This document shows, in pieces, positions 4,032 to 32,125 of a stretch of DNA of 40,882 nucleotides. Position 1 is the first letter of the stretch; every line of letters starts with the position of its first letter. Source of the stretch: Macrostomum lignano (Eukaryota); the NCBI GenBank assembly GCA_002269645.1, contig NIVC01003475.1, forward strand, positions 1 through 40,882. The letters are read 5' to 3'. The notes beneath the pieces were generated by a model. It did not search any database, had not been told where the DNA came from, and saw only the letters and a list, made by a program, of their open reading frames with translations. A program made the translations under genes and the position numbers.

Positions 4032-4647
<616 letters not shown>

Positions 4648-5752: not shown

Positions 5753-5984
5753 CTTGGAGTGTACCGGTAATTTAGCACTAGTTATTATTCCGTTAGTGAA
5801 ATGTCTGATATTGCTACTGCCAGTAGTAGCGCGTGAACTGCTTCTTCACTTCTATCTACGTTTTCACATATCACAGATTTTATTGCACATGAATTTCTCT
5901 GTAACGATGCAATGTTTTAAATTTAGCCAAATTTTTGGCATGTTTTGAAAATTTTTGTTTGTAAATCTCATTCTTATGAGGCCG

Positions 5985-6975: not shown

Positions 6976-7782
6976 CCAGTGTGTTTTTGAGTGCTTTAAA
7001 TGCGTTATTAACGTCTATAAAGTAATCGCTTTTAAAAAAGCGCGGTGAAATTGGCGGTAGAAACCACATCAAAGCGCAAAGTTCGCAGCTAGGGAGCAAT
7101 TAGACACCAGTATTAGTGAGAGGCATAGAAAATGAAGGGCTTTGCTCTACTCTGTTACTTTTTGAAATGGCGCCACTGCTTGAATCGACAGTTGAAAAGT
7201 TTCCTATAGCTTGCTGTACAAATCGTACATTTGGACTTTTAAAGCCTTCTATTTTTAGCTCAACGCAGCTACATCACGTGCAGTATACGCTGTGTCTTGC
7301 GAACGCCTGTGTCCCTTACCCCCTGAGACAGGCTACACAGAGAGGGGGCAGAAAAGACGTCACTAGTACATGTACGAACGTAGGTAGGTAGAAAGAAATA
7401 GACAGTATTAAGCCTTATTACTCCTATGCTTTCCAACTGAACCTTGCTTTCTTGTGCAGCAACGAGAATTGGTTGATATTTTTTAAACAAATCTTTTCTC
7501 TCGAGTGTTTAAATTCAATAAATCAGCAGCCTGCGCATGGTCAGTTGTACCGCAACTGCGCCGTAACGACTTTTGCAGTTTGTACCCCCTGGCGATAATT
7601 AAACTATTTTTTAATATTCGTGTGCGTCAACCGCTGTTTTTTTTTGGTTTGAGTTCGTCCACTCGTTTCAGATTGCGATAAGTCTTGGTGAGCGAGGGAA
7701 AGAGAAATAGATTACCAAGCAGCCTCTAGCGGTGCGTGGCATACGTAGATAAGCTATAGGTATAGGATATATAAGCCGGAAA

Positions 7783-9769
7783 ATGGCCGATCAAGAGTTG
7801 CAAAACGAGCAGCAAAGTCCATTAGTAGCCAGCGGTTACACTGCCGCGAATCAGCCAGAAGGTGCAGAAACTGCTTCAACCGCAATGGGTCGAATGCCTG
7901 CTAACGAAGATGAGACTGGATTCGGTTACTTGAAATCCGCAGCCAGGTGCGAGAAGACGCCGAGAAAGAATTTAAGCTTGAGCTACGATTATTACGAATA
8001 TTTTGTGTATTCTCAGGTGAGTTTTGACTTTCAGTTCTGTTGACCCTATAGTATACAGAGATCTGGATTCTGGTAAACTGCTGGAAGACCCTGTAGTATA
8101 CAGAGAGCTGGATTCTGGTAAACTGCTGGAAGACACTGTAGTATACAGAGATCTGGATTCTGGTAAAGTGCTGGAAGACACTGTAGTATACAGAGACCTG
8201 GATTCTGGTAAACTGCTGGAAGACACTGTAGTATACAGAGAGCTGGATTCTGGTAAACTGCTGGAAGACACTGTAGTATACAGAGAGCTGGATTCTGGTA
8301 AACTGCTGGAAGACACTGTAGTATACAGAGAGCTGGATTCTGGTAAACTGCTGGAAGACACTGTAGTATACAGAGAGCTGGATTCTGGTAAACTGCTGGA
8401 AGACACTGTAGTATACAGAGAGCTGGATTCTGGTAAACTACTGGAAGACACTGTAGTATACAGAGAGCTGGATTCTGGTAAACTACTGGAAGACACTGTA
8501 GTATACAGAGAGCTGGATTCTGGTAAACTACTGGAAGACCCTGTAGTATACAGAGAGATGGATTCTGGTAAACTACTGGAAGACACTGTAGTATACAGAG
8601 AGCTGGATTCTGGTAAAGTGCTGGAAGACACTGTAGTATACAGAGATCTGGATTCTGGTAAACTACTGGAAGACCCTGTAGTATACAGAGAGCTGGATTC
8701 TGGTAAACTACTGGAAGACCCTGTAGTTATATTTTATAGAAAACAACAAAGATATTTGAGTATTTTTGACAAATCCATGTGAGACCTTGAATCATGTATT
8801 GAACCGATTTGCTCAAACCCAATTCTAAATGTTCAGTGCCTGCCAGCATGGCTCATGCTCGTCCTGCGCTTCATCATGGGCGGCATCTGCGTGTCGGTGT
8901 TCCTCTACATCACATTCTCGCAGCCATTCGTCAACTTTGTGCCTGACAACTCTACGGATTCCAACAGCGGCGCCTCGGACATAACATTTTTAGACAGCGG
9001 CAACGATACAACGACAAAGCCGCCGACCGTGTTTAAACGCCATTTCTTTCTGTGCTATTTGACCATCTGGAGCTACCTAGTGATTACAATTTACTTTATA
9101 GTTGCCATTGTGAACACTGTCACACTCTGGCTGTGCTCCGGTGGTCAGACATCGGCGAGTCTCGGTGCCACTTTATCTGTTCAGCGCTACAGCTTGTCAG
9201 CCAGCGGATTCAAGTCGACGGACAATCTGATGGGCAGTCGAGGCGATCCGGACTCAGCCTTGGCTGGCGACTCGAGTCCGCGTCAGGTCGGACTCCGGCT
9301 GCAGTGGCTCCTGTGCGGCATCGCCGCCAATGCTGCCCTGCTTGTCACCGGAGCATACTTTGGCGTGCTCTACCCAATGATCCAGAAGGCTAATCCCGCA
9401 CCTATCAATCCTATCGACGTTCTAGTGCACGCATTTAATTCAGTTTTCATGCTCACCGAAGTTCTATTCTCCGGAGTGCCAGTCAGACTGGTGCACGTGA
9501 TCTACACGGCATTATACGGCCTGATCTACAGTGCATTTAGCCTGCTGTACTGGCTGCCGGATCACAGCAATGTCATCTACCCGGTTCTGCTGGATTGGAA
9601 CCACGTTGGCTTAACCATCGGCATGATGTGTCTGCTTCTGTTCGTTGGCCTGCCAGTCATCCAGCTGCTTTGGTGGCTGATCTACCTGGCGCGCTGCTAC
9701 GTTGCCGGCTCGTTGCTAAACGGTCGCCATTCCTCTTCGTCTTGGAGTCCAGACGGTCTAAGGGTTTAA
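7783..9769 (+). CDS. rost: Protein rolling stone-like multi-pass membrane protein; join(7783..8016,8837..9769), about 388 aa
   Basis: Exon 1 ends FVYSQ|GTGAGT and exon 2 starts TTCAG|CLPAWLMLVLRF, in frame. Family motifs seen: YLTIWSY, LQWLL, YFGVLY, DVLVHAFNSVFMLTEVLFSGVPVRLVHVIYTALYGLIYSAFS, and IYPVLLDW. Orthology within the family is not established. Confidence 0.85.
8043..8727. repeat. 45-bp intronic minisatellite (CTGTAGTATACAGAGAGCTGGATTCTGGTAAACTGCTGGAAGACA)
   Basis: About 15 units inside the rolling-stone intron 8017-8836. Confidence 0.97.
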
Positions 9770-11364: not shown

Positions 11365-12560
11365 CACTAAGACGGTGTCAGTATCCCTAAGAAGATGTCA
11401 GAATCTCCAAAAGGGTTTCAGAGTCTCTAAGAGGATGTCAGAGTCTCTAAGAGGATGTCAGAGTCTCCAAAAAGGGTGCCAGGTTCTCTAAGAGGATGTC
11501 AGAGTCTCCAAAAAGGGTGTCAGTGTCCCTAAGAGGATGTCAGAGTCTCCAAAAAGGGTGTCAGTGTCCCTAAGAGGATGTCAGAGTCTCCAAAAAGGGT
11601 GTCAGTGTCCCTAAGAGGATGTCAGAGTCTCCAAAAAGGGTGTCAGTGTCTCTAAGAGGATGTCAGAGTCTCCAAAAGGGTGTCAGTGTCCCTAAGAGGA
11701 TGTCAGAGTCTCCAGAAAGGGTGTCAGTGTCCCTAAGAGGATGTCAGAGTCTCCAAAAAGGGTGTCAGTGTCCCTAAGAGGATGTCAGAGTCTCCAAAAG
11801 GGTGTCAGTGTCCCTAAGAGGATGTCAGAGTCTCCAAAAAGGGTGTCAGTGTCTCTAAGAGGATGTCAGAGTCTCCAAAAAGGGTGTCAGTGTCCCTAAG
11901 AGGATGTCAGAGTCTCCAAAAAGGGTGCCAGGGTCTCTAAGAGGATGTCAGAGTCTCCAAAAAGGGTGTCAGTGTCTCTAAGAGGATGTCAGAGTCTCCA
12001 AAAGGGTTTCAGGGTCTCTAAGAGGATGTCAGAGTCTCCAAAAGGGTTTCAGGGTCTCTAAGAGGATGTCAGAGTCTACAAAAGGGTGTCAGTGTCTCTA
12101 AGAGGATGTCAGAGTCTCCAAAAAGGGTGCCAGGGTCTCTAAGAGGATGTCAGAGTCTACAAAAGGGTGTCAGTGTCTCTAAGAGGATGTCAGAGTCTCC
12201 AAAAAGGGTGCCAGGGTCTCTAAGAGGATGTCAGAGTCTACAAAAAAGTGTGTCAGTGTCCCTAAGAGGATGTCAGAGTCTACAAAAAAGGGTGTCAGTG
12301 TCCCTAAGAGGATGTCAGAGTCTCCAAAAAGTGCCAGGGTCTGTAAAAGGATATCAGAGTCTACAAAAAAGGGTGTCAGTGTCTCTAAGAGGATGTCAGA
12401 GTCTACAAAAGGGTTTCAGGGTCTCTAAGAGGATTTCAGAGTCTCCAAAAAGTGCCAGGGTCTGTAAAAGGATATCAGAGTCTACAAAAGGTTGTCAGGG
12501 TCTCTAAGAGGATGTCAGAGTCCCGAAAAAGTTGTCGCAGTCTCTAAGATGGTTTCAGAG
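11365..12560. repeat. About 41-bp minisatellite (CTAAGAGGATGTCAGAGTCTCCAAAAAGGGTGTCAGTGTCC)
   Basis: About 28 units with a variable A-run and degenerate edges. Confidence 0.97.
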
Positions 12561-12949
12561 TGTGCTCTATAAAGTTTTCGGTCGTCAGCTGTGCAAGTCA
12601 ATTTCCCGAATCTTCCTAGATCGCTTGAAGTTCGATTCGTGCAAAAAAATAAAATGTTTTTTACAACACACTTGCAATCTTGTTTTATTATGACCGATCC
12701 ACCACCCTTAAATACTATACTATTTGGCTTACAATTCTTTAACGTATGATGCTCTGCGTGTAAACTATCCAGATCGAAATATCTCTAATACTTAGCTAAT
12801 TTGATTTTATTGCCGTGCAACCAAATTTGTTTTGACTATAAGTTTAAGTATTTCATATATAGTCTATGAACTTTTGAAGGGGGAATAGAAAGTCAGAGAG
12901 ACAGACAAACAGAATATTAAAAGGAGAATATAGGATTATCTCAACTGGT

Positions 12950-16208: not shown

Positions 16209-17459
16209 TTAAGTAATGCGATTGGTCAGTGCAGGGAGTTTGGATGGGCACAGAATGTCTTTTATAGAGTTCGATCTCGTGTACGCAGCCACCGTGTCAA
16301 ACTCTTTGGCATGCTCAGCCATAAGCGATCTGATTTGGTGTACGATGCGCCCAGAGTGGCCCGTGAAAGGAATGACAATGGGAACGCAAGCACTACGGTT
16401 GGTGTCAATGCAGTTCAAACCATCTGGGGCTAGAGTTTGCAGAAGATGAATGAGCTTCAACTCCATGTCTCTGCGTCTGCGTTGTTTACCCTCACTACTG
16501 GCCTCGCACTCAGGGCTAAGATACCACAGGCCCATGAAGCGAAGGTCTTGAGGGCTGTGGTCCGCCAAGCGGAAATGCCTTGAGATCGGGGTATCTTTTG
16601 CCAGTTTGATGTCGCTTAGGTGGGCTTGGAGTCTGACCTTGAGGGCACCTCCTGTCTCTCCGATATAGATGCAGCGGTCATTGCAGCTTCTGCACAGGAT
16701 CGCATAGACCACATTTCTGGAATCACAGCGGACTTTCTGGCAGATTCTGTACACCATTTTCGTGGATCCGGAGCCCGGGCATACCTGACCGAACCGGCCG
16801 TGTTGCTTGCATACCCAGCAGTCCTCATTGCCACAGTTTCGGAATCCAAACTCCCAGCGACGGTCAAGGTAAAAGCCGAGTTGGAGGAGAGCCGACCTTT
16901 TGGCATCCCGAATCAGGCGGACCGAATAGCCTTGTTTTTTGAGGACACGCAGAAGGCTTGTGCTGGATAGGTCAAAGTCCTTCTTGTGAGTGCAGCGACG
17001 GGCATAGCGCAAGAATTGGGATTTTAGGATGCCTCTGAAGGTGTGCTTTGGGTGGAAGGAACCCGGGTTCAGCAACTGGCGAGAGTCAGTCGGCTTAAAA
17101 TAGACCGAAGTGGACAATTTTTTGCCATTGACACCTTGTTCAAGGGTAACCAGGCAATCTAAGAAGGTCACTTGGTCTTTGCTATACTGCATTGATAGAC
17201 TGATATTTGTGTCAAAGTTGTTCAGATGATGGTGTAGTTGCTTCAGTTCAGACTCCGTGCCTAGAAAAATCATGAAAATATCGTCAATGTAACGCTTGTA
17301 CAGGCGCGGAGTAACAGGAGCCTGTTCTAGTGCTCTGGATTCCCAGTCGGACATGAAAATGTTGGCGTAGGATGGAGCAAAAGCCTTTCCCATGCTAGTT
17401 CCTTTGACTTGCAAGTAGCGGCAGCCATTGAAGACGAAGTCGTTCTGGTTCAGAATATT
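16209..17459 (-). CDS. PLE reverse transcriptase (partial) + GIY-YIG endonuclease
   Basis: ILNQNDFVFNGCRYLQVKGTSMGKAFAPSYANIFM and RYIDDIF are RT motifs. SVYFKPTDSRQLLNPGSFHPKH is the PLE thumb motif. CGNEDCWVC is a Cys linker. NVVYAILCRSC..IYIGETG..RLQAH..SRHF is the GIY-YIG domain. The frame is open to the stop at 16209. Confidence 0.92.
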   Translation of the reverse strand, partial: NILNQNDFVFNGCRYLQVKGTSMGKAFAPSYANIFMSDWESRALEQAPVTPRLYKRYIDDIFMIFLGTESELKQLHHHLNNFDTNISLSMQYSKDQVTFLDCLVTLEQGVNGKKLSTSVYFKPTDSRQLLNPGSFHPKHTFRGILKSQFLRYARRCTHKKDFDLSSTSLLRVLKKQGYSVRLIRDAKRSALLQLGFYLDRRWEFGFRNCGNEDCWVCKQHGRFGQVCPGSGSTKMVYRICQKVRCDSRNVVYAILCRSCNDRCIYIGETGGALKVRLQAHLSDIKLAKDTPISRHFRLADHSPQDLRFMGLWYLSPECEASSEGKQRRRRDMELKLIHLLQTLAPDGLNCIDTNRSACVPIVIPFTGHSGRIVHQIRSLMAEHAKEFDTVAAYTRSNSIKDILCPSKLPALTNRIT

Positions 17460-18677
17460 TTTATTTTATATTTTTTATATATTTTATATATTTTTTATAT
17501 ATATTTTTACTTTATGAGTCCTGAATACGTCATTGTGTCATTTAATGACTGCGCTTTGAATGACCTCTTGTGACAAGTTGTTCTAAAATTAGACTGTATC
17601 TGATAGTTGTGAGCTTCACATACGAGCCGTATGTTCAAGTTGTGTTGCTTTTAAAATAGAAATCTCATAGCATCATCTGCGCAATTGCACATGTTGCATT
17701 TATTCTCCAATGGATTCTCCAATGAATCTTGTATTTTACCGGGAGTGGGTGGGGATTAGCTGTCCCCGATTGACCCCCCTGGGTCAGCCACTGAGTAAAG
17801 TGCTCTCTCCCTTCAAATTTTCTGAACTGAAGTTTCAAAAATGCATTTCAGGTAAAAAAGTTTTCTATCTTAAACGCCGCACATTATGGAGGAAAATTTA
17901 TGGCCACAATATTTTGACACTTTGTCCAACAAAACTGTTCTTATTGCTACACGTTTGCCATAAGACACAAACACGTGTAAAACTGTGACCTACATGTATG
18001 AACCCTCGCCCTACGCTCGATGTTGAAGGTAAGGGTTTAGGGTCGCAGCAGTCGGTATTGCTGCCACATCTGGCCACAAACAGCGGTGTAGGAGGTCACA
18101 GCGAAACTCCGTCATCGCTCTACTTTGCCGGGCCAGAATCCAGCTGCCTGCCAACCCGCGCTTTGCCATAGCAACAGATGCATAGATAGAGCCAGCGAGG
18201 GAGACAGATAGACTTGAACCCTGTGCAGCAAGTCTGCGCATTCCCAATGCGAACAAATTGCAGACAGCTGCTGCAATGCATTGTGCACTCGAGCTTCCCG
18301 GATGAATGACCATCTTATTGTACGTTGATAATCGCGTTAATTCGTTCTACAGGATTATAGCACTAATAGAAAATTACGTCCATACCCCATTTTTCAATTG
18401 CAAAACACGTAATAAGGTACCCGTCAGAAATTTTATTACGCACATACTATATTTTTCTATTAAAAATCAAGTAGTAAGGTACTGAACCAAATGGTAGGGT
18501 ATTCTACAGGAATTTCAACTACACTGCACGGTACCCACAAATAATTCAAAAGAAGAAAAGATCCCAAGTCCGATTAACCGACCAACTTGTCCAAAAACGC
18601 ATTTTCAGTATATTTCTAAACGATGCGAATCAAAATAATTCCCCGACTCTTCGTCCACGCCCCCCCCCTCCCTAAAT

Positions 18678-19058
18678 TTAAGGATCTCGGCGACGCACCC
18701 GCGGCGGAGCGCGCATGTATACCATCTTAAAACTATTCGCAGTCTCGTCCACCCGGAATCTGGCCACACTCTCAATGGACACGGAGCCATCGGACTCCAA
18801 GTGACGGCAGTAGCCAGCACCGTCCAAAGAAGTGCAGCGGCGGTCGGATGGTAGTCTCCACGCCGTCGCTCGTACCCCCGTCCCGTGTCGTCCGAGTAGA
18901 TTAATTCCCTCCGCCCGGCACACCGTCCTGATTTCATCAATCCGGGCGTTCGTCATCAGCCGCCGCGGCGTATAAGCAGTCGCCACGCACACGGCCCTGG
19001 CCACGGTGTCAAGCACCTGCGTCAGTGGAAGCCCGGCCTGCTGTCCTTCCAGGCGCAT
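18678..19058 (-). CDS. Hypothetical ORF in left inverted arm (mirror of 21776-22158)
   Basis: MRLEGQQAGLPLTQVLDTVARAVCVATAYTPRRLMTNARIDEIRTVCRAEG..., the same sequence as the right arm. Confidence 0.3.
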   Translation of the reverse strand: MRLEGQQAGLPLTQVLDTVARAVCVATAYTPRRLMTNARIDEIRTVCRAEGINLLGRHGTGVRATAWRLPSDRRCTSLDGAGYCRHLESDGSVSIESVARFRVDETANSFKMVYMRAPPRVRRRDP

Positions 19059-19382
19059 GCGCTGGATCTGCGCGCGAAGTGCAGCAACCGAGGGGTTCTG
19101 GCACCACTCATACCGTACTTACCGCGCCAACGTGGTGAAAATTGCCCGGCGGGAGGAGCAGGGTGCAGCTCCACTCGGGGTCGGCTCATGACGCTCGTTT
19201 GATTCGGCCATTGCAAAGATGTAGGTCCAATCTCACCGTAAAAATGTAGGTCTAATCTCACTATCTGTGGGCAACTCTGACTCTGAGCCGACCATCCGCT
19301 CGATTATACATGTATGTCAGTGTGGACTCAATGTGGACCCGGGGCGGGGGCGCGGCTCGAGGATGAAGGGGGAAAGTCCAGC

Positions 19383-19770
19383 TGCGCCCCTCCCCGCCCT
19401 CATGCGCCCAAGAAACCGAAGCCTGCAGCAACGACCAGCTGGCCCTCCGCGCCCCTCCCCACCCTCATGCGCCCAAGAAACCGAAGCCTGCAGCAACGAC
19501 CAGCTGGCCCCCCGCGCCCCTCCCCACCCTCATGCGCTCAAGAAACCGAAGCCTGCAGCAACGACCAGCTGGCCCCCCGCGCCCCTCCCCACCCTCATGC
19601 GCTCAAGAAACCGAAGCCTGCAGCAACGACCAGCTGGCCCCCGCGCCCCTCCCCACCCTCATGCGCCCAAGAAACCGAAGCCTGCAGCAACGACCGGCTG
19701 GCCCTCCGCGCCCCTCCCCACCCTCATGCGCCCAAGAAACCGAAGCCTGCGGCAACGACCGGCTGGCCCG
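19383..19770. repeat. 61-63 bp GC-rich tandem repeat inside the foldback element
   Basis: GCGCCCCTCCCCACCCTCATGCGCCCAAGAAACCGAAGCCTGCAGCAACGACCAGCTGGCCCC, about 6 units. Confidence 0.95.
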
Positions 19771-19993
19771 GCTGAAGGCCCTTTCCAGCCAGTTGGGCGA
19801 CCGGCTGGACTTTCACTTAGCGAGATAGTAATACAATAGAGCACCTGACCCCACGTGGGCGGCCTGTGGACTCTCAACTTAGCGAGACAGTATTACAATA
19901 GAGCAGAGCTCGCGTGCGTGGGCCGGAAAGCACCATTATTTTCTCCAAACTGCCCAACTTATTTAACCAGCCTGCCGAACGGATTTGTTTGTC

Positions 19994-21563
19994 GAATTCT
20001 AGATAACTAACTGGAAGCGAAGGCTTTTTTGGGGGGCGGACACAACCGGGCCGAGTGGGAGCCTGCATGTTTTCTGGCTGCCTTATTCAACACTAATGTT
20101 TTCACTAATAATTGGCTGCTGTTATTAAGAGTAATATTTAATTCTTTAAGTTTATTTTTTTAATTAACAAGTCAGTGCTTATTAAGAGTCACTAAAGGTA
20201 TTTGTGACATATCTTAACAAAACTAATATTTTTGCAAAGCCGCAAAGTAAACACATAGGATCAGTAAAAAATCATAGTATGAACATAAATTAGCTGCTTA
20301 ATCTAATCTATGAAGAAGATGCATCGCGGTACCATCGCCACTGCATCGCGGTACTTTCCGGCGATCGATTTCACCTGATACATCGCGGTCAAACTCGACG
20401 ATTTCGTCGAGTCTCTTCCTGCCGACCGTCGAACGCGCCCAGCGCCAGCTGGACCAGCTTGTGAGCGTTGCTGCGAGCGTCGGCCCGGGGGTCAACACGC
20501 AGAAGACCGTCGTGCTTCGGCCTGTCCCTTCCCAGCAAACTTTTGCGCCGTCCACGACTCCAGCTGGCAGGCCACATCATCCGAGCCGAGTCCTAAAGTC
20601 CACAGCCGGTGCAGGAAGTGCTGCTGCTGTCGCTGCAGGCACCCTACCGGCGGGGACAGGCGCGCAGTCTGTGTTTCGTCGACTTCTTGCCGGCTAATGC
20701 CGGCGCCCCGGACTCTGCCGGCGGTGCGGCCGGCGGTTCGCGCCCAGGCCCTGAAACGTGTGACGTTGTCCTTGTCTCTCATGACCATGACTCGCTGGAA
20801 TGGCTGACAGCGCATTTTGTTGTTGTATGGAGGGCACACCGGCACACCATCATTCCTTATTCAGAGTGTCGCTGTTTCTCCTGCGCTCACTAAGAATCTT
20901 GTGACGTTGTGTGAAAATCGGTGGCAATAAAGTGCAACGAGCACAGTTGAGATTCTGTCCTGGGTTGGTAGTTTACCCTTCGAATTCGTTGCGACCATTC
21001 TTCAAATAGTTGAAAATCATGCAAAGGAAGCACATGAGAAAATATTCTGCTTTCTGTTCCTGAAGATTGAACCGCTGGATTTTTATTTGTAGTTGCATAT
21101 CCAGATCCAGACCTGTAGTTGTAAGCTGCGTATTTATAAACCATTCTTTTTCTCTGACTATAGTCTCTGATATAGCATGCATCATATCGAATCTTTATAA
21201 ATTTTTCATTTAGGGTGAAGTGGAGACGGCATCCACAAAAGCATGCGAGCAAATGTACACCCAATGTGCATGCGTTCAGCTTTCAAGTGGGGGGCCTGTT
21301 ACCCCGTGTGCATCACAGACAAAGAAACAGCACTGATTTACCGGGGATCTTCCTTCCCCTCCGAAGGGTTTTTCTCCTGTCTAGGACAAAAAACTTCCAA
21401 GCCTTGTGAAGAGCCTGCCCACCTCAAACCCCGCTTAGTCAGTGGGACTGAGATAGGGAAAGGCAGGCCGTTTAAACAAGCTAAAATGACTCGGCCCGGT
21501 TGTGTCCGCTTTCGACCCACGAAAAAGTGAGCCTTCTCTTCCAGTTAGTTATCTAGAATTCTA
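19994..21563. mobile_element. Nested unit with about 65-70 bp imperfect inverted termini and flanking 8-bp direct repeat TGTTTGTC
   Basis: GAATTCTAGATAACTAACTGGAAG...GCGGACACAACCGGGCCGAGT (19994-20056) is inverted at 21489-21561. TGTTTGTC occurs at 19986-19993 and 21564-21571. Confidence 0.6.
20826..21144 (-). pseudogene. Degenerate THAP zinc-finger domain
   Basis: MVYK[Y]AAYN[Y]RSG...LP...EEWSQRIRRVNYQPRTESQLCSLHFIATDF, then stops/frameshifts and a NDGVPSI remnant of the AVPxIF box. The W, P and CSxHF residues are retained, but both N-terminal Cys positions read Tyr. Confidence 0.75.
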
Positions 21564-21687
21564 TGTTTGTCCATGGGGCAGCTGTTCCTTCGTTATTCAA
21601 GCCCAACCCCGAAACTGCCACGTGGCACAAAAAGCCAGATGGCGCCCCTCCCTACCAAATCCTGCTCTATAAAAGAAAGTAGAAAAT

Positions 21688-22158
21688 TTGCTCAAAATCC
21701 CAACGAGCCAAGGACAACAGGAAGCAACCCAAGCGTCCTCGGTTGCTGCACTTCGCGCGCAGATCCAGCGCATGCGCCTGGAAGGACAGCAGGCCGGGCT
21801 TCCACTGACGCAGGTGCTTGACACCGTGGCCAGGGCCGTGTGCGTGGCGACTGCTTATACGCCGCGGCGGCTGATGACGAACGCCCGGATTGATGAAATC
21901 AGGACGGTGTGCCGGGCGGAGGGAATTAATCTACTCGGACGACACGGGACGGGGGTACGAGCGACGGCGTGGGGACTACCATCCGACCGCCGCTGCACTT
22001 CTTTGGACGGTGCTGGCTACTGCCGTCACTTGGAGTCCGATGGCTCCGAGTCCATTGAGAGTGTGGCCAGATTCTGGGTGGACGAGACTGCGAATAGTTT
22101 TAAGATGGTATACATGCGCGCTCCGCCGCGGGTGCGTCGCCGAGATCCTCAAATTTAA
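21688..22158 (+). CDS. Hypothetical ORF in right inverted arm (mirror copy at 18678-19058 on the minus strand)
   Basis: GC-rich 126-156 codon frame, open in both arms with only a few amino acid differences. No family recognised and coding status is unproven. Confidence 0.3.
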   Translation: MLKIPTSQGQQEATQASSVAALRAQIQRMRLEGQQAGLPLTQVLDTVARAVCVATAYTPRRLMTNARIDEIRTVCRAEGINLLGRHGTGVRATAWGLPSDRRCTSLDGAGYCRHLESDGSESIESVARFWVDETANSFKMVYMRAPPRVRRRDPQI

Positions 22159-22644
22159 GGGGGGGGGGCGTGGACGAAGAGTGGGGGAATTATTTTGATT
22201 CGCATCGTTTAGAAATATACTGAAAATGCGTTTTTGGACAAGTTGGTCAGTTGATCGGACTTGGAATCTTTTCTTCTTTTGAATTATTTGTGGGTACCGT
22301 GCAGTGTAGTTGAAATTCCTGTAGTATACTCTACCATTTGGTTCGGTTCCTTACTACTTGATTTTTAATAGAAAAATATAGTATGTGCGTAATAAAATTT
22401 CTGACGGGTACCTTATTACGTGTTTTGCAATTGAAAAATGGGGTATGGACGTAATTTTCTATTACTGTTGATTATAACAGCGAAGGTGTGAAAGAGGAAG
22501 GATGGAGGGAGACTGCTGGGTGTGTTTAAATGTCACTGTGGCTGTAGATTTCAGATTTTAACTAAATGTGACAAAATCGGAGAATGGCAAGCAAGCTATC
22601 CAGTGGATGCAAAGCAGTCCTGCCCATTCCACTGGTCCCTGAGC

Positions 22645-23354
22645 CAAGGACTGCTCAAGTAGAAGCACGGAAACAGCGTTTCTTAGATAATGTTTATGAG
22701 GCTGGTTTTCGCAGAAAAATACACTACGGAGATTGGAAATTTTCATTTTTCAGCACAAAAAGTGTTATTACTTTCGATAGGAAGCAGACCCAGTGTTCAT
22801 CTTTTAATATGTTGTGCCTTTTATATAGCTCTATTGATATTCATAAAGCTTTTCGTTCAGAAAATTGGGATTCTTTGTTAATTTTTTATTCTACGTACAA
22901 TTATTGTAACATACTCTGTGCCTAAAAACCTTTAAAATGGCAAGGCACGGCTCATGGGTTTTACTAATCTAATTTGTCATTTTTAGCTGGCTGTGCAACA
23001 ATATTTGTAACAGAGTTGATAAAACAGATTCATAAAACCAAAGAGTCGAGCTGTGCCATGCACTTTTATGATTTTTAGCCACAGAAAATGTACGTAGAAT
23101 AAAAAATTAAGATAGAATTCTAATTTTCTAAACGAAAAGCTTAATGAATATCAGTAGAGGATAAAAAAGGCAATGAGAAAGACACAGCATATCAAAATAT
23201 GAACATTGGGTCTGCCTCCTATCGAAAGCAATAACAATTTTTGTGCTGAAAAATAAAAACTTCCTATCTCCGTAGTGTATTTTCAGAGAAAATCAGTCTC
23301 ATAAACATTTTCTAAGAAACGCAGCTTCTTGTCCTTCTACTTGAGCAGTCCTTG
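22645..23354. mobile_element. Non-autonomous TIR element (P-like MITE) with long imperfect TIRs and perfect 8-bp TSD CCCTGAGC
   Basis: Begins CAAGGACTGCTCAAGTAGAAG and ends CTTCTACTTGAGCAGTCCTTG. Inverted similarity extends roughly 200 bp. CCCTGAGC lies at 22637-22644 and 23355-23362. Superfamily (P vs hAT) is inferred only from the CA terminus and 8-bp TSD. Confidence 0.9.
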
Positions 23355-24126: not shown

Positions 24127-24816
24127 ATGTTCTTCGAAAAGAAAGACGGCATCGTCTACAAGACGGTGACGGGCAACGATTATTGCCAGGTTGCTCGCCT
24201 CCTGTGCGACAGTTTCTATTCGGCCACTCCTCTCAGTTGGCCGCTGGGTGGGCCGCTGGCTCCGGCCGAGGTTGAGACCGTCTTCCCCCAGCTCAGCGTT
24301 ATCATCTCGCATCGGGTGTCGATTTTGGCCTTCGACGCTGACACGAAAGAAATTGTCGGCGTCCGGCTGTCTGTCCTGTCGGATAGAGAGTCGCGATGCT
24401 CGCCATCGGATCCGCTGTTGGACAGCGCGGAGCTGGCGGCTCGCTACCCGAAGCATAGCCGACTGGTTCAACTGGAGCAACACCTGGACATTCAAGCAGA
24501 TTGCCTGGCCAGGTACCGAGTCAGCCGGGCAATGATCGGCAGGTTCCTAGCCGTGAAAGAGTCGCACGCGAATCGCGGCATCGGCGGCCGACTCGTCGAG
24601 AGCAGCGTTCGTCTGGCTAAAGTGCTCCGAATCCCGCTGGTGATTGGCACGTCGCACAATGTCTATTCGCATCGGATTTATCGATCGCTTGGCTTCGATT
24701 GCATCTATTCGGTTCAGTTCCGCGACTACACAGACGAATTGGACGGCGAGAAACCGTTTGCGGCTCTGGAGGATACTGAGCACTCCGAGGCGGCTGTGTT
24801 TGCCTATCGACTGTAG
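24127..24816 (+). CDS. GNAT-family acetyltransferase, arylalkylamine/dopamine N-acetyltransferase-like, single exon, 229 aa
   Basis: Acetyl-CoA-binding motif A is LAVKESHANRGIGGRLV, followed by TSHNVYSHRIYRSLGF. N-terminal LLCDSFYSATPL and the AFDADTKEIVGV strand fit insect-type AANAT/NAT folds. Codon usage is GC3-rich. Confidence 0.85.
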   Translation: MFFEKKDGIVYKTVTGNDYCQVARLLCDSFYSATPLSWPLGGPLAPAEVETVFPQLSVIISHRVSILAFDADTKEIVGVRLSVLSDRESRCSPSDPLLDSAELAARYPKHSRLVQLEQHLDIQADCLARYRVSRAMIGRFLAVKESHANRGIGGRLVESSVRLAKVLRIPLVIGTSHNVYSHRIYRSLGFDCIYSVQFRDYTDELDGEKPFAALEDTEHSEAAVFAYRL

Positions 24817-26688
24817 CTAATCTCGCTAGACACGGCGGCGAACGAATTGCCCATCTTCCCACAAAAACTGCGCCCCTCCAAAAACCAAAACGACAGAGCC
24901 CAACAAACTACCTGCGCCCCCATATCTACCTTGATATGCATAGAAATTGCGTAACTCAATGTCTTTCCATCATATGCTGAATTAAATTTCATTTCAGCCA
25001 AAACTCGACTTCATGCATTCATCTTATTATCGACGAAGATTTCTATTGGATGTTGCTAATGAGACTAATGACAATGCGTTAACTTTTAACGGATTGCATA
25101 AAGAGTTTAAACTATCTGTGATGCCTATTTTGCCATTTAGGTTCAGCAGTAATGAATTGATGAAGTATAGCAAATTTCTCATTTCTCGAAGACGCCATGC
25201 TCAGAGCTGGGGGAACACTGAACCGTTCATTTCTTAATATGTCTATTGTTATCGCACCTTTCCTGCACCCTCCTAAATTGTGAAGGCACAATAGCTCCGA
25301 AGACCCTTCGCTCTATCGGACTAACTAGAATTGAATGTTCATTTCAATTCATTTTAGTGACCATGCACTGCGCACTTCGCCCACCCTGCAACTACAGTTT
25401 CAGTTGAACAAATATGCGCCAACTTCGTCATCTTTCGCAGAATAAATCTTCTAACTAAACTAACTTGGCAGAGATATTTTTTATAAATAGACTGCTTTTC
25501 AGAATGCAATATTTAACTGAAGCATATCATAAGGTACGTGTATGCGCATGATATAAAAATACCATGAAATGCAGTCACCCTTCAAAGCTTCTTGCTATCT
25601 GGTCAGTGAACAAATATATAATAATTATACAGCCATCTTTGAAATCGTATGCATAAGCTTTCATTAGATTATTTTTATTGGTGTCTTTTCATAATCTTAA
25701 GCATCGAATTTATGTGTAACTTAGTATAACCCACTCATTTCGAAAACTCATTTTGTTAACAGGACATTGCCCAAGAACTGCCACTGAGGTACTCGTGGAG
25801 TGGAGCGCCGTGGATTGATATTTAAGCATCCTTGAAAGAGAATCTGGTGCCAATGGAGTCATCGTGTTGCCACCGAATTGGCCCCAGGTGACAAACTCAT
25901 GTCAAGTGCCCCAAAGCCGTTCGAGAAGGTACGTGCTGCTCCAGATGGCCAGCGATGTCGGACCCTGGCCGGAGACTCACAGCAGGCAGTTAGTTCACCT
26001 GTAGAGGCATGGCCGCAGTAGCCAGTTGAAGTCGCCGCCCTCTAAATGCATGGCTATATCTTTCGAGCTATTATAGTCATTCTCCTAGTCTCATTTTGGT
26101 CTCAAGGCGCACCTTACTGTCGGTAGATATCGTTTTGTTTCGTGTACATTAACCTAAGCGTGATTAATTCCAATTGATTACCAATTTCAATACATTGATG
26201 TATACTTACTGGCAAAGGTAAACAGAACCGATGTGGTAGCTCTGCAAAAAACCCATCATGTGCTTCTTTCACTCACGGGAATGAAGCTAGCTATGCTGGC
26301 ATCCGAGTGTATATATAGCTATACACTGTAGGCGTGTTAAACTGTGTTTGATGGTCTTCTTGCAGGGAACAACAACTGTCAAAATGCAAACGTCTCTTGG
26401 AGTTTAAAAGAGAAATTTCTAAAATAGCAGCACTGCAGTCAATAGCTCGTATAGCTAGCTGGGTCAAATTCCTACCAACAGCTGACGGGAAAACGTTTGT
26501 AGCTAAACTTGCTTCGGGTAAACATGCACGAATATAAGGCTGATAGTGATAGCTTACTCGTTATTTGTAAATATCACGGGGCTTATAATCTCCTTAAATC
26601 ATAAGTAGATATTGTTGAAGTGTCTGGCAATTTTACATGTTCTTAAACTGGATTTGAACTGACGTACATGTATATATAGATATGCATA

Positions 26689-27006
26689 GACTGCTGCTGC
26701 TGGTCATGCCCACAATGCCGGAAACAGGCCTCTAATCCGAAAGGGCTCCTTCTTTGAGGCCAGTCATCTGCCCTTGACGCAGATAGCTAGTGGACCTCAG
26801 CTACTGGAGTGCAGGCCTAACAACCCGGATGTCCATACTAACACAATAGAGGGCACATTGCCCACCACGAGGGCCATGCATGGCACATTGGCACATCCAA
26901 GGCTCTGTTCAACACCCACCTGGACGAGTTCCTGTGGCGCCGTTGCCACCCACGCAACACCTTCGGCAACATCCTTTTCTGGGTGGCGCATTACTACGAC
27001 GTCTGA
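26689..27006 (+). pseudogene. Merlin/ISXO2 (IS1595-like) transposase remnant, internally deleted and frameshifted
   Basis: N-terminal piece WSCPQCRKQAS/IRKGSFFEASHLPLTQI is fused to the C-terminal piece VHTNTIEGT.../HIGTSKALFNTHLDEFLWRRCHPRNTFGNILFWVAHYYDV*. The catalytic core is absent. Confidence 0.8.
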
Positions 27007-27311
27007 AACTCTCCATTTAGTAGTTTAATAACAACGTCTCCGTTGGCGTTGCTCCGTTGTTAAAACTTCGTTACAATTTCGTAAAATAATCATAGCGCTA
27101 TACTAGCGGTAGGTAGTCATAGCGTCATGGTCTATATTTTAATTCATACGCAATTATTCGCCCTAAGGGCTAAGGCCAAAGCCTGCTCGCCCTACCTACC
27201 ATTGGCCATTCAAACTGAAGGAATTGCCGAAATATAGCAGACGAAGATCATGGAATAAAACACTTCATTGTTAACTGTTTATATTTTCCAAATGTCGCTC
27301 CAATTGATAAC

Positions 27312-27383
27312 TCCTCGATAGTATAGTGGTCAGTATCTCCGCCTGTCACGTGGAAGGCCCGGGTTCGATTCCCGGTCGGGGAG
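27312..27383 (+). tRNA. trnD-GTC: tRNA-Asp (anticodon GTC)
   Basis: 72-nt cloverleaf TCCTCGATAGTATAGTGG...CTGTCAC...GGTTCGATTCCCGGTCGGGGAG. All stems pair, and a T6 Pol III terminator follows at about 27386-27391. Confidence 0.97.
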
Positions 27384-28604
27384 AATTTTTTGCGTAATTT
27401 AAACTAAAACGTTTTATCAATCATGTCAGTTTTCGCACTTCTCCGTATTTATTCACAAGCAGTGTATCTTTTGCTTATTGCTGATTTCAATGTCAAAACA
27501 TAATGACCCCTAAAATACTATTTCCACAATTTCAAAAATAATAAAGTATTTTGACTTAGGTTTTGTTATCATTGAGCATTTGAACTGAGCCTAAATTCGA
27601 TTAAACAATCGAATGTGGAATTTGTGAAATTTAAAACAAGACATTTATTAGATAACGAATCATAGCAAACTTAGTGTTTTTTTAAATTGTTTTATTCTCA
27701 TTCCGAGTCAGTTATCCAAATAAAATTATACCTGCACATAGCCGATATGTATCGAAAAACATCTAAAGGCACTTAAATAATTAACAATAAATGTAGGTCA
27801 GGCTATTAAAAAACTTTTAATAAATTTCTGTCAACTGCTGAAATTTTTGGACGTCGTCAAAAATCAGAAAAAAGATTTTATTGCAACTATTTGTTCTTTC
27901 TTATCTTTGACTTCTTTATTCTGAGCAATCAAAATATTCTACTTGTTAGTAGAACCTACAAAAATTTATTAAAAGGTTTCTTCCACGCTGTAAAAAACAA
28001 TAAACCTTTTTTTGAGTACGCTTTGGATTTTCATTGCTATGTAAAATCAATCGTATTCGTATGTGACTTAATTGTAGTCTCATTAGACATGCACATTTAT
28101 ACATGAATGCCCATGTAGCTCGTACTTGAGAGAAGTACTCCCCGTCTAAAGAAAAAATGTTAATAATTACAAGGTTTCCTTTGTTATAGCTATGTCTCAT
28201 TTTTAGTCAGCGTAGATGCCTCGCTGTTTAAAAAGAAAGAAACTCGACGAATTTTTTAAAATATTTATTTGATTTTGCACGTAGACACCACGTGTGTCGC
28301 TCGTATATTTCAAAACAATAGATACGATATGCCACAAGGCTTGAAAGAGCAAACATATAATAAACCTTTCTGTCAAGTCGAAGATCAGCCACCCAGATCA
28401 GTTACCAAGACCTGCGGAGAGACATCGACGTGCGATGGAACAGGTTGCAAGTGAAACGTATTTTAACGATACGTAGATTATATATATGAATAATTTAGAA
28501 ACTGCATTCTCAATCTAAACTAGGTCTACCGTATTTTCAAACTACAGTATGCCACTGACATACGCCTCTAATTTCTTCCCATACTTACGAGGTAGAACTC
28601 CCAC

Positions 28605-29345
28605 CAATCCGTCGATTTTGCAACTCCCTCCAGTCTGTCGGTTCTGCCACTCCCTCCGATCCAACGGTTCTGCAACTCCCTCCCTGCATCCATCGGTTCT
28701 GCCACTCCCTCCGATCCAACGGTTCTGCAACTCCCTCCCTGCATCCATCGGTTCTGCCACTCCCTCCGATCCAACGGTTCTGCAACTCCCTCCCTGCATC
28801 CATCGGTTCTGCCACTCCCTCCGATCCAACCGTTCTGCAACTCCCTCCCTGCATCCATCGGTTCTGCCACTCCCTCCGATCCAACGGTTCTGCAACTCCC
28901 TCCCTGCATCCATCGGTTCTGCCACTCCCTCCGATCCATCGGTTCTGCAACTCCCTCCCTGCATCCATCGGTTCTGCAACTCCCTCAATTCTTCGAACCT
29001 GCAACTCCGTTAAATCCTTCAGTCCTGCAACTTCCTCCAATCCTTCTGTTCTGCAACTCCCTCAAATCCTTCAGCCTTGCAACTCTCTCCAATCCTTTGG
29101 TTCTGCAACTCACTCCTTTGGTTCTGCAACTCCCTCCTTTGTTCTGCAACTCCCTCCTTTGGTTCTGCAACTCCCTCCTTTGGTTCTGCAACTCCCTCCT
29201 TTGGTTCTGCAACTCCCTCCTTTGGTTCTGCAACTCCCTCCTTTGGTTCTGCAACTCCCTCCTTTGGTTCTGCAACTCCCTCCTTTGGTTCTGCAACTCC
29301 CTCCTTTGGTTCTGCAACTCCCTCCTTTGGTTCTGCAACTCACTC
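28605..29345. repeat. Compound minisatellite in lipase intron: 55-bp (26+29) dimer grading into 21-bp GGTTCTGCAACTCCCTCCTTT
   Basis: Shared core GGTTCTGC(A/C)ACTCCCTCC; the 55-aa periodicity of the spurious ORFs confirms the 55-bp unit. Confidence 0.95.
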
Positions 29346-29448
29346 CAATCATCCATCCCTGCTCCTGCCCTTCCCTTCAAACAATCATTCGATCCTCCAA
29401 ATCCAACTTCCAATTCGAAATGCAAAGGCAAAAATGAACGTCACTCAC

Positions 29449-30901: not shown

Positions 30902-31493
30902 CTTGACTACCAATAAACGGTGCGTGTCTCAATCGAGTGCTTAAATCGGTAACTTAAACTGCAAAGGTAGTTTTATTGAAGAGTTCCAGTCAAGTTTAAA
31001 TAAGTAAATATTTGTCGTAAATTGGTAACACATTTCAACTTCACACGATTTTTTTTGTCATTGATATGATATGGGAGAAAAATACGCCAAAATGGGTACG
31101 CAAAACATATCTCACTCGTAGAGTGCCTCAGTTCTCAGCACAGACCTACCTTTGTACTCGTATTTGGAAATCAATAGCCAATTAATTAAGATGAAGTCAT
31201 TCCAGCAAAGCGCAAAAAAAATCCCGACAATCGCGTGAACTTCAATTGCTTTGGTTGAGTCCGGTGCATGGGAGTTGCGCAGATGCTTCACCGACTTTCT
31301 ATACACAGGTATAGAAACTTGTATGCGTGCATGGTTTTGTTGTTTTGAAATTCATTAACTATAAGCGCACCTGTTTCATTCTTTTCTTTCAAAACAATTC
31401 AAAATGTAATTAAGTTAATGCTTCAGAAATACGGTTAGCTTTGCGACTGAAGTTTCAACTTAGGATTGCAGCTTTCAAGAAGTTGGCTACTTG

Positions 31494-32125
31494 GTTTAGT
31501 TCGTCACTTGCAGGTTTAGTTCGTCACTTGCAGGTTTAGTTCGTCACTTGCAGGTTTAGTTCGTCACTTGCAGGTTTAGTTCGTCACTTGCAGGTATAGT
31601 TCGTCACTTGCAGGTTTAGTTCGTCACTTGCAGGTTTAGTTCGTCACTTGCAGGTTTAGTTCGTCACTTGCAGGTTTAGTTCGTCACTTGCAGGTTTAGT
31701 TCGTCACTTGCAGGTTTAGTTCGTCACTTGCAGGTATAGTTCGTCACTTGCAGGTTTAGTTCGTTACTTGCAGGTTTAGTTCGTCACTTGCAGGTTTAGT
31801 TCGTCACTTGCAGGTTTAGTTCGTCACTTGCAGGTTTAGTTCGTCACTTGCAGGTTTAGTTCGTTACTTGCAGGTTTAGTTCGTCACTTGCAGGTTTAGT
31901 TCGTCACTTGCAGGTTTAGTTCGTCACTTGCAGGTTTAGTTCGTCACTTGCAGGTCTAGTTCGTCACTTGCAGGTCTACTTCGTCACTTGCAGGTTTAGT
32001 TCGTCACTTGCAGGTTTAGTTCGTCACTTGCAGGTCTAGTTCGTCACTTGCAGGTCTAGTTCGTCACTTGCAGGTCTAGTTCGTCACTTGCAGGTCTAGT
32101 TCGTCACTTGCAGGCTTAGTTCGTC
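31494..32125. repeat. 20-bp minisatellite (GTTTAGTTCGTCACTTGCAG)
   Basis: About 31 nearly perfect units. Confidence 0.98.

What the first reader, a model, noticed from the sequence alone, without database searches (positions are those of the whole stretch)
18361..22467. 4.1 kb foldback element with CACTA terminus, 730-bp arms and THAP cargo: a possible Galileo/P-related family
Seen: 18361-19093 and 21737-22467 are near-identical inverted arms, each with an AT-rich outer ~300 bp and a GC-rich inner ~430 bp. The left end starts CACTAATAG. The interior holds tandem repeats and a decayed THAP domain. GATTATA occurs 1 nt outside the left end (18353-18359) and 2 nt outside the right end (22470-22476). 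Known: Drosophila Galileo is a P-superfamily foldback element with long TIRs, CACTA ends, a THAP transposase and 7-bp TSDs. Inference: this could be a non-autonomous member of an undescribed long-TIR family in a non-arthropod, able to form large hairpins or dsRNA and to promote rearrangements. The offset TSD and the single mismatch in the right terminus (CAGTA) keep the assignment tentative.
Basis: partly seen in the sequence, partly recalled or inferred. Interest (0 to 1): 0.8.

Follow-up and report, generated by a model that had tools for sequence, protein, structure and literature searches.

The report
Old long-armed transposon with nested insert
This is a dead, non-coding DNA transposon with two 733-base inverted arms in the flatworm Macrostomum lignano, carrying a second transposon inside it; it is ordinary repeat debris, not a demonstrated Galileo/P relative.

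Summary
Arms 18361-19093 and 21737-22467 align inverted over 733 bp at 97.8% (outer third 35% GC, inner part 63% GC). GATTATA flanks both ends (chance about 1e-3). A 65-bp x6 array and a partial THAP domain lie inside.

The window is Macrostomum lignano (Mlig_3_7, contig NIVC01003475.1).

- CACTA is not the terminus. The three distinct arm ends read AGCACT, AACAGT and AGTAGT. The symmetric reading gives a 6-bp duplication GATTAT; 7 or 8 bp are also possible.
- The THAP remnant sits in a separate nested element (19994-21563) with its own 63-73-bp inverted ends and 8-bp duplication TGTTTGTC. It says nothing about the outer element.
- No transposase remnant was found. The 156-aa arm ORF has no homolog among 1.84 billion proteins and shows no coding constraint.

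Two homeologous contigs carry the right arm and right flank but unrelated DNA left of 21351. The insertion is therefore old, and a rearrangement breakpoint lies inside it.

The ends fit Maverick/Polinton (6-bp duplication, (AGT)2 end, TIR length) at least as well as P/Galileo. Copy number could not be tested. Interest is low.

The parts
18353..18359 (+). Left copy of the flanking direct repeat GATTATA. This is the target-site duplication: 6 bp (GATTAT) if A18359 is the first base of the element, 7 bp as written, or 8 bp (GGATTATA vs TGATTATA) with one mismatch.
   Evidence: Chance of a >=7-nt shared word in 10-nt flanks is 1.2e-3.
18360..19093 (.). Left arm (terminal inverted repeat). The outer ~295 bp is AT-rich and the inner ~437 bp is GC-rich. 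The end reads (A)GCACTAATAG.
   Evidence: It shows 15, 10 and 14 mismatches to the right arms of the window, L001 and L003.
19094..19993 (.). Left internal spacer, 61% GC. It has no counterpart on the right side and no protein domain.
19384..19769 (.). Tandem array, 65-bp unit x 6.
19986..19993 (+). Left copy of the 8-bp direct repeat TGTTTGTC flanking the nested element.
   Evidence: chance 2.4e-4.
19994..21563 (.). Nested second TIR element, about 1.57 kb. Its inverted ends are 19994-20056 and 21489-21561. It holds the THAP remnant and a GC-rich segment.
   Evidence: (I6, I8).
20390..20810 (+). GC-rich segment whose translation resembles the C-terminal tail of a LINE ORF2. The motifs, read across a frameshift, are GVNTQKT..., RLQLAGHIIR and RRGQARSLCFVDFL. 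This is my reading from memory; no tool supports it.
   Evidence: translation. Pfam finds nothing. Inference only.
20893..21138 (-). Decayed THAP domain. It keeps the P, W, C-x2-H and F positions and lacks the first C-x(2-4)-C.
21350..21351 (.). Breakpoint of collinearity with the two homeologous contigs L001 and L003. To the right all three align; to the left L001 and L003 carry unrelated DNA.
21564..21571 (+). Right copy of TGTTTGTC, 2 nt (TA) beyond the nested element's GAATTC end.
21572..21736 (.). Right internal spacer of the outer element.
21737..22469 (.). Right arm. It ends ...CTATTACTGTT in the window and ...CTATTACTACT in L001 and L003. It contains an outward-facing 156-aa ORF (21688-22158) that is not a constrained coding sequence.
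   Evidence: ORF.
22470..22476 (+). Right copy of GATTATA. It is also present in L001 and L003.

Best explanation
It is one old insertion of a non-autonomous class II DNA transposon with long terminal inverted repeats, of an uncharacterised Macrostomum lignano family.

Shown:
- Two 733-bp arms, about 98% identical, end exactly where a short direct repeat of host DNA, GATTAT(A), begins on both sides.
- There is no recognisable coding capacity.
- A second TIR element (19994-21563, 8-bp duplication TGTTTGTC) is nested inside it. That element, not the outer one, carries the THAP remnant.
- The right arm and right flank are shared by two homeologous contigs, and the left arm is as far from its own partner as from theirs. 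The insertion therefore predates the divergence of these copies.

Inferred:
- The element was moved in trans by an enzyme that recognises the AT-rich outer part of the arms.
- It is now immobile, because the terminal 5-6 nt differ between all arms.
- Its only remaining effect is structural. A 733-bp inverted repeat 2.6 kb apart can snap back as single-stranded DNA or as read-through RNA, and can act as a substrate for recombination or breakage.
- The L001/L003 lineage lost or replaced everything left of 21351.

The enzyme cannot be settled from one copy. My ranking is:
- Maverick/Polinton-type integrase, about 0.3 (6-bp duplication, (AGT)2-type end, typical TIR length).
- A cut-and-paste transposase making 7-8-bp duplications, about 0.35, of which P/Galileo-like is about 0.15.
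- Other or none for the rest.
For: - Arms and identity.
- Flanking repeat abutting the symmetric ends, and its chance level.
- No domains in any frame of the arms or spacer.
- The arm ORF has no homolog by word-index search or by exhaustive phmmer against 1.84e9 proteins. Its substitutions fall 5/1/2 on codon positions 1/2/3.
- Nested element ends and 8-bp repeat.
- Homeologous loci share 21351 onward, including the arm and GATTATA.
- At seven sites the window's right arm is unique while the left arm agrees with L001 and L003. The left arm is therefore not a recent copy of its partner.
- The same region shows another clean insertion versus empty site: a 47-bp mini-element with a 7-bp duplication in L001/L003. 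A neighbouring 710-bp foldback MITE has an 8-bp duplication. TIR transposition has clearly shaped this locus.
Against: - Only one full copy was seen. No second copy of the arms occurs in the window, in L001 or in L003, and the host genome could not be searched, so mobility as a family is unproven.
- No empty site was recovered. Both homeologs have the right arm, and neither shows the window's left flank within 7 kb.
- Two of three loci have a single arm. If that state were ancestral, the window's two-armed state would be a secondary rearrangement and the flank match would be chance (about 1e-3).
- L001 is a mosaic of the other two haplotypes, so the tree cannot polarise the change.
- The terminal nucleotides are imperfectly paired and the TSD length is ambiguous.
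Confidence: 0.7

Rival explanations
1. One reading: a non-autonomous Galileo-like member of the P superfamily. It would have 7-bp duplications, a CACTA end, and a THAP transposase remnant as its own cargo.
For: - Long arms and a 7-nt flanking repeat GATTATA in AT-rich DNA.
- Galileo makes 7-bp (rarely 8-bp) duplications in AT-rich targets and has foldback-like TIRs (PMC4168063).
- A THAP remnant is present within the coordinates.
- A 47-bp mini-element with an exact 7-bp duplication inserted nearby in the homeologs. An enzyme making 7-bp duplications therefore exists in this genome.
Against: - The 7-bp reading leaves 1 unpaired nt on the left and 2 on the right.
- CACTA occurs in one of the three distinct arm ends.
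- GATTATA does not match GTANTAC.
- THAP lies inside a nested element with its own ends and 8-bp duplication. It is closest to cellular THAP1/2, with no hit to P transposase.
- No Tnp_P/THAP9-type catalytic remnant appears in any frame.
- The arms are not internally repetitive, unlike Galileo or FB arms.
Confidence: 0.15
2. A gutted Maverick/Polinton. Only the two TIRs and some filler remain, either after internal deletion in place or as a TIR-only derivative integrated in trans by a Maverick integrase.
For: - The symmetric reading of the ends gives an exactly abutting 6-bp duplication GATTAT.
- The right end in L001 and L003 is ...ACTACT, i.e. 5'-AGTAGT. That is the commonest vertebrate Maverick end motif, (AGT)2//(ACT)2. 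Maverick TIRs span 46-1447 bp and their TSDs are 6 bp (PMC8097293).
- C. elegans Polinton TIRs are 744 bp, and TIR-only remnants persist and drive rearrangements (bioRxiv 10.1101/2024.01.15.575659).
Against: - No remnant of polymerase B, integrase, protease, ATPase or capsid genes.
- The size is 4.1 kb against 12-25 kb.
- Both window arms differ from AGTAGT at 2 of 6 positions and share C at position 3.
- The motif comparison was made after the fact, with some freedom in choosing the boundary; I estimate chance at about 0.5-1%.
- Mavericks are not documented for Macrostomum in the papers I could search.
Confidence: 0.3
3. Not a transposon. The two-armed structure would be a local inverted duplication, an ectopic-recombination product, or an assembly join made in the window's lineage from an ancestral one-arm state like that of L001 and L003.
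For: - Two of the three homeologous contigs have only the right arm and different DNA to the left of 21351.
- No other copies were seen.
- The M. lignano assembly is known to be difficult and to contain mosaic sequences (PMC10733133). L001 itself is a haplotype mosaic.
Against: - The arm homology stops exactly at a direct repeat of flank sequence on both sides (p about 1e-3). An inverted duplication does not predict this.
- The arms differ at 15 sites. At seven of these the right arm carries changes made after it split from L001, and the left arm lacks them. It is therefore neither a recent duplication nor a palindromic read artefact.
- L001 and L003 share a derived 47-bp insertion next to the breakpoint, so they form one lineage there.
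Confidence: 0.1

Closest known systems
Galileo (P superfamily, Drosophila)
   Same: Long inverted arms of several hundred bp. A possible 7-bp duplication in AT-rich DNA. Non-autonomous copies are common, other transposons are often nested inside, and the element is linked to rearrangements (PMC4168063).
   Different: No P-type transposase remnant. The THAP remnant belongs to a nested element. The target is not GTANTAC. The arms have no internal tandem repeats. CACTA is not the consensus end. The host is a flatworm.
Maverick/Polinton TIR-only remnants (for example the C. elegans Polinton_CE_TIR, 744 bp)
   Same: Arm length, a possible 6-bp duplication, an (AGT)2-type end in two homeologs, and a rearrangement breakpoint at the locus (PMC8097293; bioRxiv 10.1101/2024.01.15.575659).
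   Different: No Maverick gene fragment at all. The end motif is degenerate in the window's own arms. No Maverick with related TIRs is known or testable here.
Foldback-like elements in general (Drosophila FB, Tm1 of Meloidogyne, FARE)
   Same: Most of the outer element is inverted repeat, it has no coding capacity, and it carries a tandem array. The class is polyphyletic, with different transposases behind similar shapes (PMC3169594).
   Different: FB and Tm1 arms are built from short tandem motifs and vary in length between ends. Here the arms are unique sequence and the tandem array sits in the spacer. Tm1 makes 9-bp duplications.

Membership tests
P superfamily / Galileo | Transposase with an N-terminal THAP domain plus a P-type (THAP9-like) catalytic domain, or clear remnants, between the same TIRs | tested here: not met
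   The only hit in the ORFs and six-frame segments scanned is a partial THAP. It lies in a nested element with its own TIRs and TSD. PDB hits are to THAP1 and THAP2 only.
P superfamily / Galileo | 7-bp (Galileo) or 8-bp (P) target-site duplication | tested here: inconclusive
   GATTATA flanks both ends, but with 1-nt and 2-nt offsets. A 6-bp (symmetric ends) or 8-bp (one mismatch) duplication fits equally well.
P superfamily / Galileo | Galileo target consensus GTANTAC / palindromic target motif | tested here: not met
   The TSD is GATTATA. The consensus comes from PMC4168063.
P superfamily / Galileo | Conserved terminal TIR sequence shared with family members | not testable with these tools
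   No Galileo or P consensus library is on hand. Internally, CACTA occurs in one of the three distinct arm ends.
Maverick/Polinton | 6-bp target-site duplication | tested here: inconclusive
   GATTAT abuts both ends if the ends are read symmetrically, as 18359-22469. A single copy cannot exclude 7 or 8 bp.
Maverick/Polinton | End motif 5'-(AGT)2//(ACT)2-3' or (AG)3//(CT)3 | tested here: inconclusive
   L001 and L003 right ends are ACTACT, an exact match. The window ends are AGCACT and AACAGT, 4 of 6 each. The motif comes from PMC8097293.
Maverick/Polinton | Core genes (protein-primed polymerase B, retroviral-type integrase, protease, ATPase, capsid proteins); size 12-25 kb | tested here: not met
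   No Pfam hits in any frame. The element is 4.1 kb.
CACTA / EnSpm (CMC) | CACTA termini directly flanked by a 2-4-bp duplication (established knowledge) | tested here: not met
   The bases abutting CACTA.../...TAGTG-type ends are TAG on the left and TTG on the right. CACTA occurs in one arm only.
hAT | 8-bp duplication directly abutting short TIRs that start YARNG (established knowledge) | tested here: not met
   With ends placed at CAC/CAG/TAG, the 8-mers are GATTATAG and TTGATTAT, out of register.
Kolobok / piggyBac | TTAA target duplication (established knowledge) | tested here: not met
   No TTAA at either junction.
Foldback (structural class) | Arms composed of tandem sub-repeats, variable between ends | tested here: not met
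   The tandem-repeat scan finds arrays only in the spacer, 19384-19769, and none in the arms.
Any transposon family | Multiple dispersed copies with independent TSDs; empty sites | not testable with these tools
   No eukaryote genome nucleotide search is available. There are no further copies in the window, L001 or L003, and none in JGI metagenomes.

The most novel reading that the evidence does not exclude
The outer element is a TIR-only derivative of a Maverick/Polinton, with an (AGT)2-type end, a 6-bp duplication and about 730-bp TIRs. This would reveal an undescribed Maverick lineage in macrostomid flatworms whose leftover inverted TIRs seed structural differences between the subgenomes of this neopolyploid. 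Less likely, it is a Galileo-like P-superfamily foldback outside Drosophilidae.
Probability: 0.3. Interest if true: 0.45.

Novelty: new member of a known kind. Interest (0 to 1): 0.25.

Why it matters
As it stands, this is routine annotation of decayed, nested repeats in a genome that is largely repeats.

It would matter modestly in three ways:
- Transposon families of Macrostomum are essentially uncharacterised (PMC10468722). The arms give a ready probe for defining one.
- The three homeologous copies differ by a rearrangement whose breakpoint lies inside the element. They also differ by a clean mini-element insertion. Both are useful markers for how the subgenomes of this neopolyploid diverge.
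- If the ends prove to be Maverick-type, this would be a further case of leftover Maverick TIRs shaping loci, as at eri-6/7 in C. elegans.

Tried and rejected
- Arm ORF as a protein: no Pfam hit, no hits by word-index search, and none by exhaustive phmmer over 1.84e9 proteins. Substitutions show no codon bias. Rejected as a gene.
- THAP fragment as a route to an autonomous copy: the homolog search found nothing.
- Other copies: terminal 23-mer with 3 mismatches in the window, the arms by blastn and tblastn in the window, L001 and L003, and a 26-mer in JGI metagenomes. Only the known arms were found.
- Walking to the left flank in the homeologs through the upstream gene 8855-9769: that product is not on record.
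- Extension of the arms inward: no similarity between 19094-19993 and the reverse complement of 21562-21736. The inner inverted repeat is therefore a separate element, not a continuation of the arms.
- Polarising the one-arm versus two-arm states by phylogeny: L001 is a mosaic of the other two haplotypes, so this failed.
- RNA families and tRNA: none.
- Considered and rejected: composite of two independent insertions (no repeat of GATTATA at the inner arm ends); palindromic read artefact (arms differ at 15 sites and are separated by a 2.6-kb spacer); CACTA/EnSpm, hAT and Kolobok (the junctions do not fit).
- The LINE-tail reading of 20390-20810 rests on motifs I recognise from memory. Pfam does not support it.

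Full report
**Observation**

The two arms are real. Window 18361-19093 and 21737-22467 give a single inverted BLASTN alignment of 733 columns at 97.8% identity. The repeat finder reports it as 432 nt at 99% plus 308 nt at 97%, split by an indel in a C/G run.

The outer ~295 bp of each arm is 35% GC and the inner ~437 bp is 63% GC, against 44% for the window.

The left end reads CACTAATAG. The right end, reverse-complemented, reads CAGTAATAG. GATTATA lies at 18353-18359 and 22470-22476. A shared word of 7 nt or more between 10-nt flanks occurs in 0.12% of random position pairs in this repeat-rich window.

The interior holds a 65-bp x6 tandem array at 19384-19769. It also holds a partial THAP domain on the minus strand, about 21138-20893. 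Pfam gives E=1.2e-4 at 23.3 bits, just below the 23.9 cutoff, covering profile positions 17-60 of 87. Human THAP1 and THAP2 are hit in the PDB at E=8e-5 to 6e-4. The first zinc-binding Cys pair is gone.

**Where it comes from**

The GNAT acetyltransferase gene at 24127-24816 is recorded on contig NIVC01003475.1 of GCA_002269645.1 at those same coordinates. That locus is 100% identical to window 14127-34816. The window is therefore the first 40,882 bases of that contig.

The assembly is Mlig_3_7 of the free-living flatworm Macrostomum lignano. This species is a neopolyploid with three homeologous subgenomes and a repeat-rich, hard-to-assemble genome (PMC10733133).

Other genes in the window are a rolling-stone homolog, a reverse-transcriptase fragment, a pancreatic-type lipase and an otopetrin.

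**Homeologous loci**

The same or a 99%-identical acetyltransferase lies on two further contigs: NIVC01001378.1 (L001) and NIVC01001839.1 (L003).

Both align with the window from 21351 rightwards. The aligned stretch covers 385 bp of interior, the whole right arm, the GATTATA flank, the neighbouring MITE and the genes. Substitution identity is 98.3-99.2%.

Left of 21351 both contigs carry DNA unrelated to anything in the window: 49-bp and 23-bp tandem arrays and a mariner at L001:5415-6602. Within the 7 kb I could see, these two loci have one arm only.

L001 turns out to be a mosaic. It equals the window in 24351-27350. It equals L003 in 27351-28350 and at the left edge. At the breakpoint there are effectively two lineages, so the tree cannot say which state is ancestral.

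L001 and L003 also share a derived 47-bp mini-element next to the breakpoint. It has the perfect 18-bp inverted ends CAGGGAATACTCTACATA and an exact 7-bp duplication GATAGGG. The window has the clean empty site.

**The ends**

The terminal hexamers are:
- AGCACT for the window left arm.
- AACAGT for the window right arm.
- AGTAGT for the L001 and L003 right arms.

The position-wise consensus is AGCAGT. CACTA is therefore neither terminal nor consensus.

Read symmetrically (18359-22469), the element is flanked by a directly abutting 6-bp repeat GATTAT. Read for the longest repeat, the duplication is 7 bp with 1 and 2 unpaired bases at the ends. Read as 18360-22468, it is 8 bp with one mismatch (GGATTATA versus TGATTATA). 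One copy cannot decide between these.

**Age and origin of the left arm**

The left arm differs from the right arms of the window, L001 and L003 at 15, 10 and 14 sites. At seven sites the window's right arm is unique while the left arm agrees with L001 and L003.

The left arm is therefore not a recent copy of its partner. The two arms have been diverging for at least as long as the homeologous copies. This argues against both a recent inverted duplication and a palindromic sequencing artefact.

Together with arm homology ending exactly at a flank repeat on both sides, the best reading is a single old insertion of a two-armed element. The L001/L003 lineage would then have lost or replaced the left 3 kb later. 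The opposite polarity would make the flank match a coincidence of about 1 in 1000.

**The interior is not one thing**

A second inverted repeat, 19994-20056 versus 21489-21561, shows 32 nt at 97% and 21 nt at 100%, or 82% over 73 columns. It is flanked by the 8-mer TGTTTGTC at 19986-19993 and 21564-21571, with a chance of 2.4e-4.

Nothing else between the arms pairs up. This is a nested 1.57-kb TIR element.

The THAP remnant lies inside it and reads inward from its right end. So does a GC-rich stretch (20390-20810, plus strand) whose translation looks to me like the tail of a LINE ORF2. That reading is from memory only, and Pfam finds nothing.

The 8-bp duplication plus a THAP remnant makes the nested element itself a possible P-type derivative. 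No catalytic-domain remnant supports this, and the THAP is closest to cellular THAP1/2.

Without the nested element, the outer element is about 2.5 kb: two arms, a 900-bp spacer with the 65-bp array, and a 175-bp spacer.

**Coding capacity**

No frame of the arms or spacers hits Pfam.

The 156-aa ORF that runs outward in each arm has no homolog in the word-indexed 5.8-billion-protein search. It has none in an exhaustive phmmer run over 1.84 billion representatives.

The eight substitutions among the four copies fall 5/1/2 on codon positions 1/2/3. The ORF is best explained as an open frame arising by chance in GC-rich DNA. No Rfam family or tRNA is present.

**Which kind of element**

P-superfamily membership rests on the transposase (PMC4168063), and none is present.
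- Galileo's 7-bp duplication is possible here, but only with asymmetric ends.
- GATTATA does not match GTANTAC.
- The arms are not internally repetitive.
- The THAP argument falls away because of the nesting.

Foldback-shaped elements are polyphyletic: P, MULE and Phantom transposases have all been found inside such arms (PMC3169594). Shape alone therefore assigns nothing.

The symmetric reading fits another known kind. Mavericks/Polintons make 6-bp duplications, have TIRs of 46-1447 bp, and most often end in 5'-(AGT)2//(ACT)2-3' (PMC8097293). The right end in L001 and L003 is exactly ACTACT. In C. elegans the Polinton TIR is 744 bp, and TIR-only remnants persist and mediate rearrangements (bioRxiv 10.1101/2024.01.15.575659).

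Against the Maverick reading:
- There is no Maverick gene fragment.
- The window's own ends match the motif at only 4 of 6 positions.
- I noticed the match after the fact.

I rank Maverick-type at about 0.3, P/Galileo-like at about 0.15, another 7-8-bp cut-and-paste family at about 0.2, and not a transposon at about 0.1. The remainder is unassigned. CACTA/EnSpm, hAT and Kolobok junction rules are not met.

**How it works now**

It most likely does nothing enzymatic. The ends are degenerate and no partner enzyme is identified.

What remains is a 733-bp, 98% inverted repeat with a 2.6-kb spacer. By inference, this could fold back in single-stranded DNA or in a read-through transcript, and could act as a recombination substrate.

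A collinearity breakpoint between homeologs does fall inside the element, at 21351. However, it lies in the nested element and not in the arms. It is a single case, and it does not show that the element caused the rearrangement.

**What could not be done**

No tool here searches a eukaryote genome by nucleotide sequence. Copy number, other ends and TSDs, an autonomous partner and a true empty site therefore remain untested. The exact tests are listed under next steps.

**Verdict**

This is an uncharacterised member of a known kind, a non-autonomous long-TIR DNA transposon with a nested second element. It is of low general interest, with a modest chance of being a Maverick-derived TIR-only element.

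Noticed in passing
window 22645-23354 (related copy about 35585-36135): A 710-bp foldback MITE 175 bp right of the element. Its arms pair almost end to end at 85-96%, its ends read CAAGGACTGCTCAAGTAGAAG, and it has an exact 8-bp duplication CCCTGAGC. It is present in all three homeologs. A second, roughly 85%-similar copy lies 12 kb downstream.
   Followed up: partly
L001 7275-7328 (also L003); empty site at window 21452-21458: A 47-bp mini-element with perfect 18-bp inverted ends CAGGGAATACTCTACATA and an exact 7-bp duplication GATAGGG. It is present in both homeologs and cleanly absent from the window. This points to an insertion since these copies diverged, by an enzyme that makes 7-bp duplications.
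   Followed up: partly
window 21351 onward vs L001 and L003: L001 is a haplotype mosaic. It is identical to the window over 24351-27350 but groups with L003 over 27351-28350 and at 21351-21850. This indicates either homeologous exchange or gene conversion, or a chimeric consensus in the assembly.
   Followed up: partly
arm alignment columns 449-614 (window about 22185-22350): Five clustered sites where the window's left arm agrees with L003's right arm, against the right arms of the window and L001. This looks like a gene-conversion tract between arms or copies rather than independent substitutions.
   Followed up: no
window 16209-17414 (minus strand): A 401-aa ORF with a weak reverse-transcriptase match (RVT_1, E=1.8e-4). 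By eye it has a GIY-YIG-like motif (IYIGETG) downstream, so it looks like a Penelope-like retroelement fragment 1 kb left of the element.
   Followed up: partly
window-wide, e.g. 4032-4651, 5984-6982, 8042-8727, 11396-12561, 28596-29346, 31493-32125, 39024-40499: Minisatellite and microsatellite arrays are unusually dense, with more than a dozen arrays of 20-65-bp units and up to 1.5 kb each. Some lie in or next to genes. L001 and L003 differ from the window in array lengths.
   Followed up: no
L001 5415-6602: A mariner-type element with 41-bp inverted ends and a 301-aa transposase ORF (HTH_48 plus Transposase_1). It lies in the DNA that replaces the left part of the element in the homeologs.
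   Followed up: partly
L001 7077-7161, directly left of the breakpoint: A 25-bp-stem GC-rich hairpin (88% paired, 35-nt loop) ends 11 nt before the point where collinearity with the window begins. It may be the end of another inserted element or may relate to the rearrangement.
   Followed up: no
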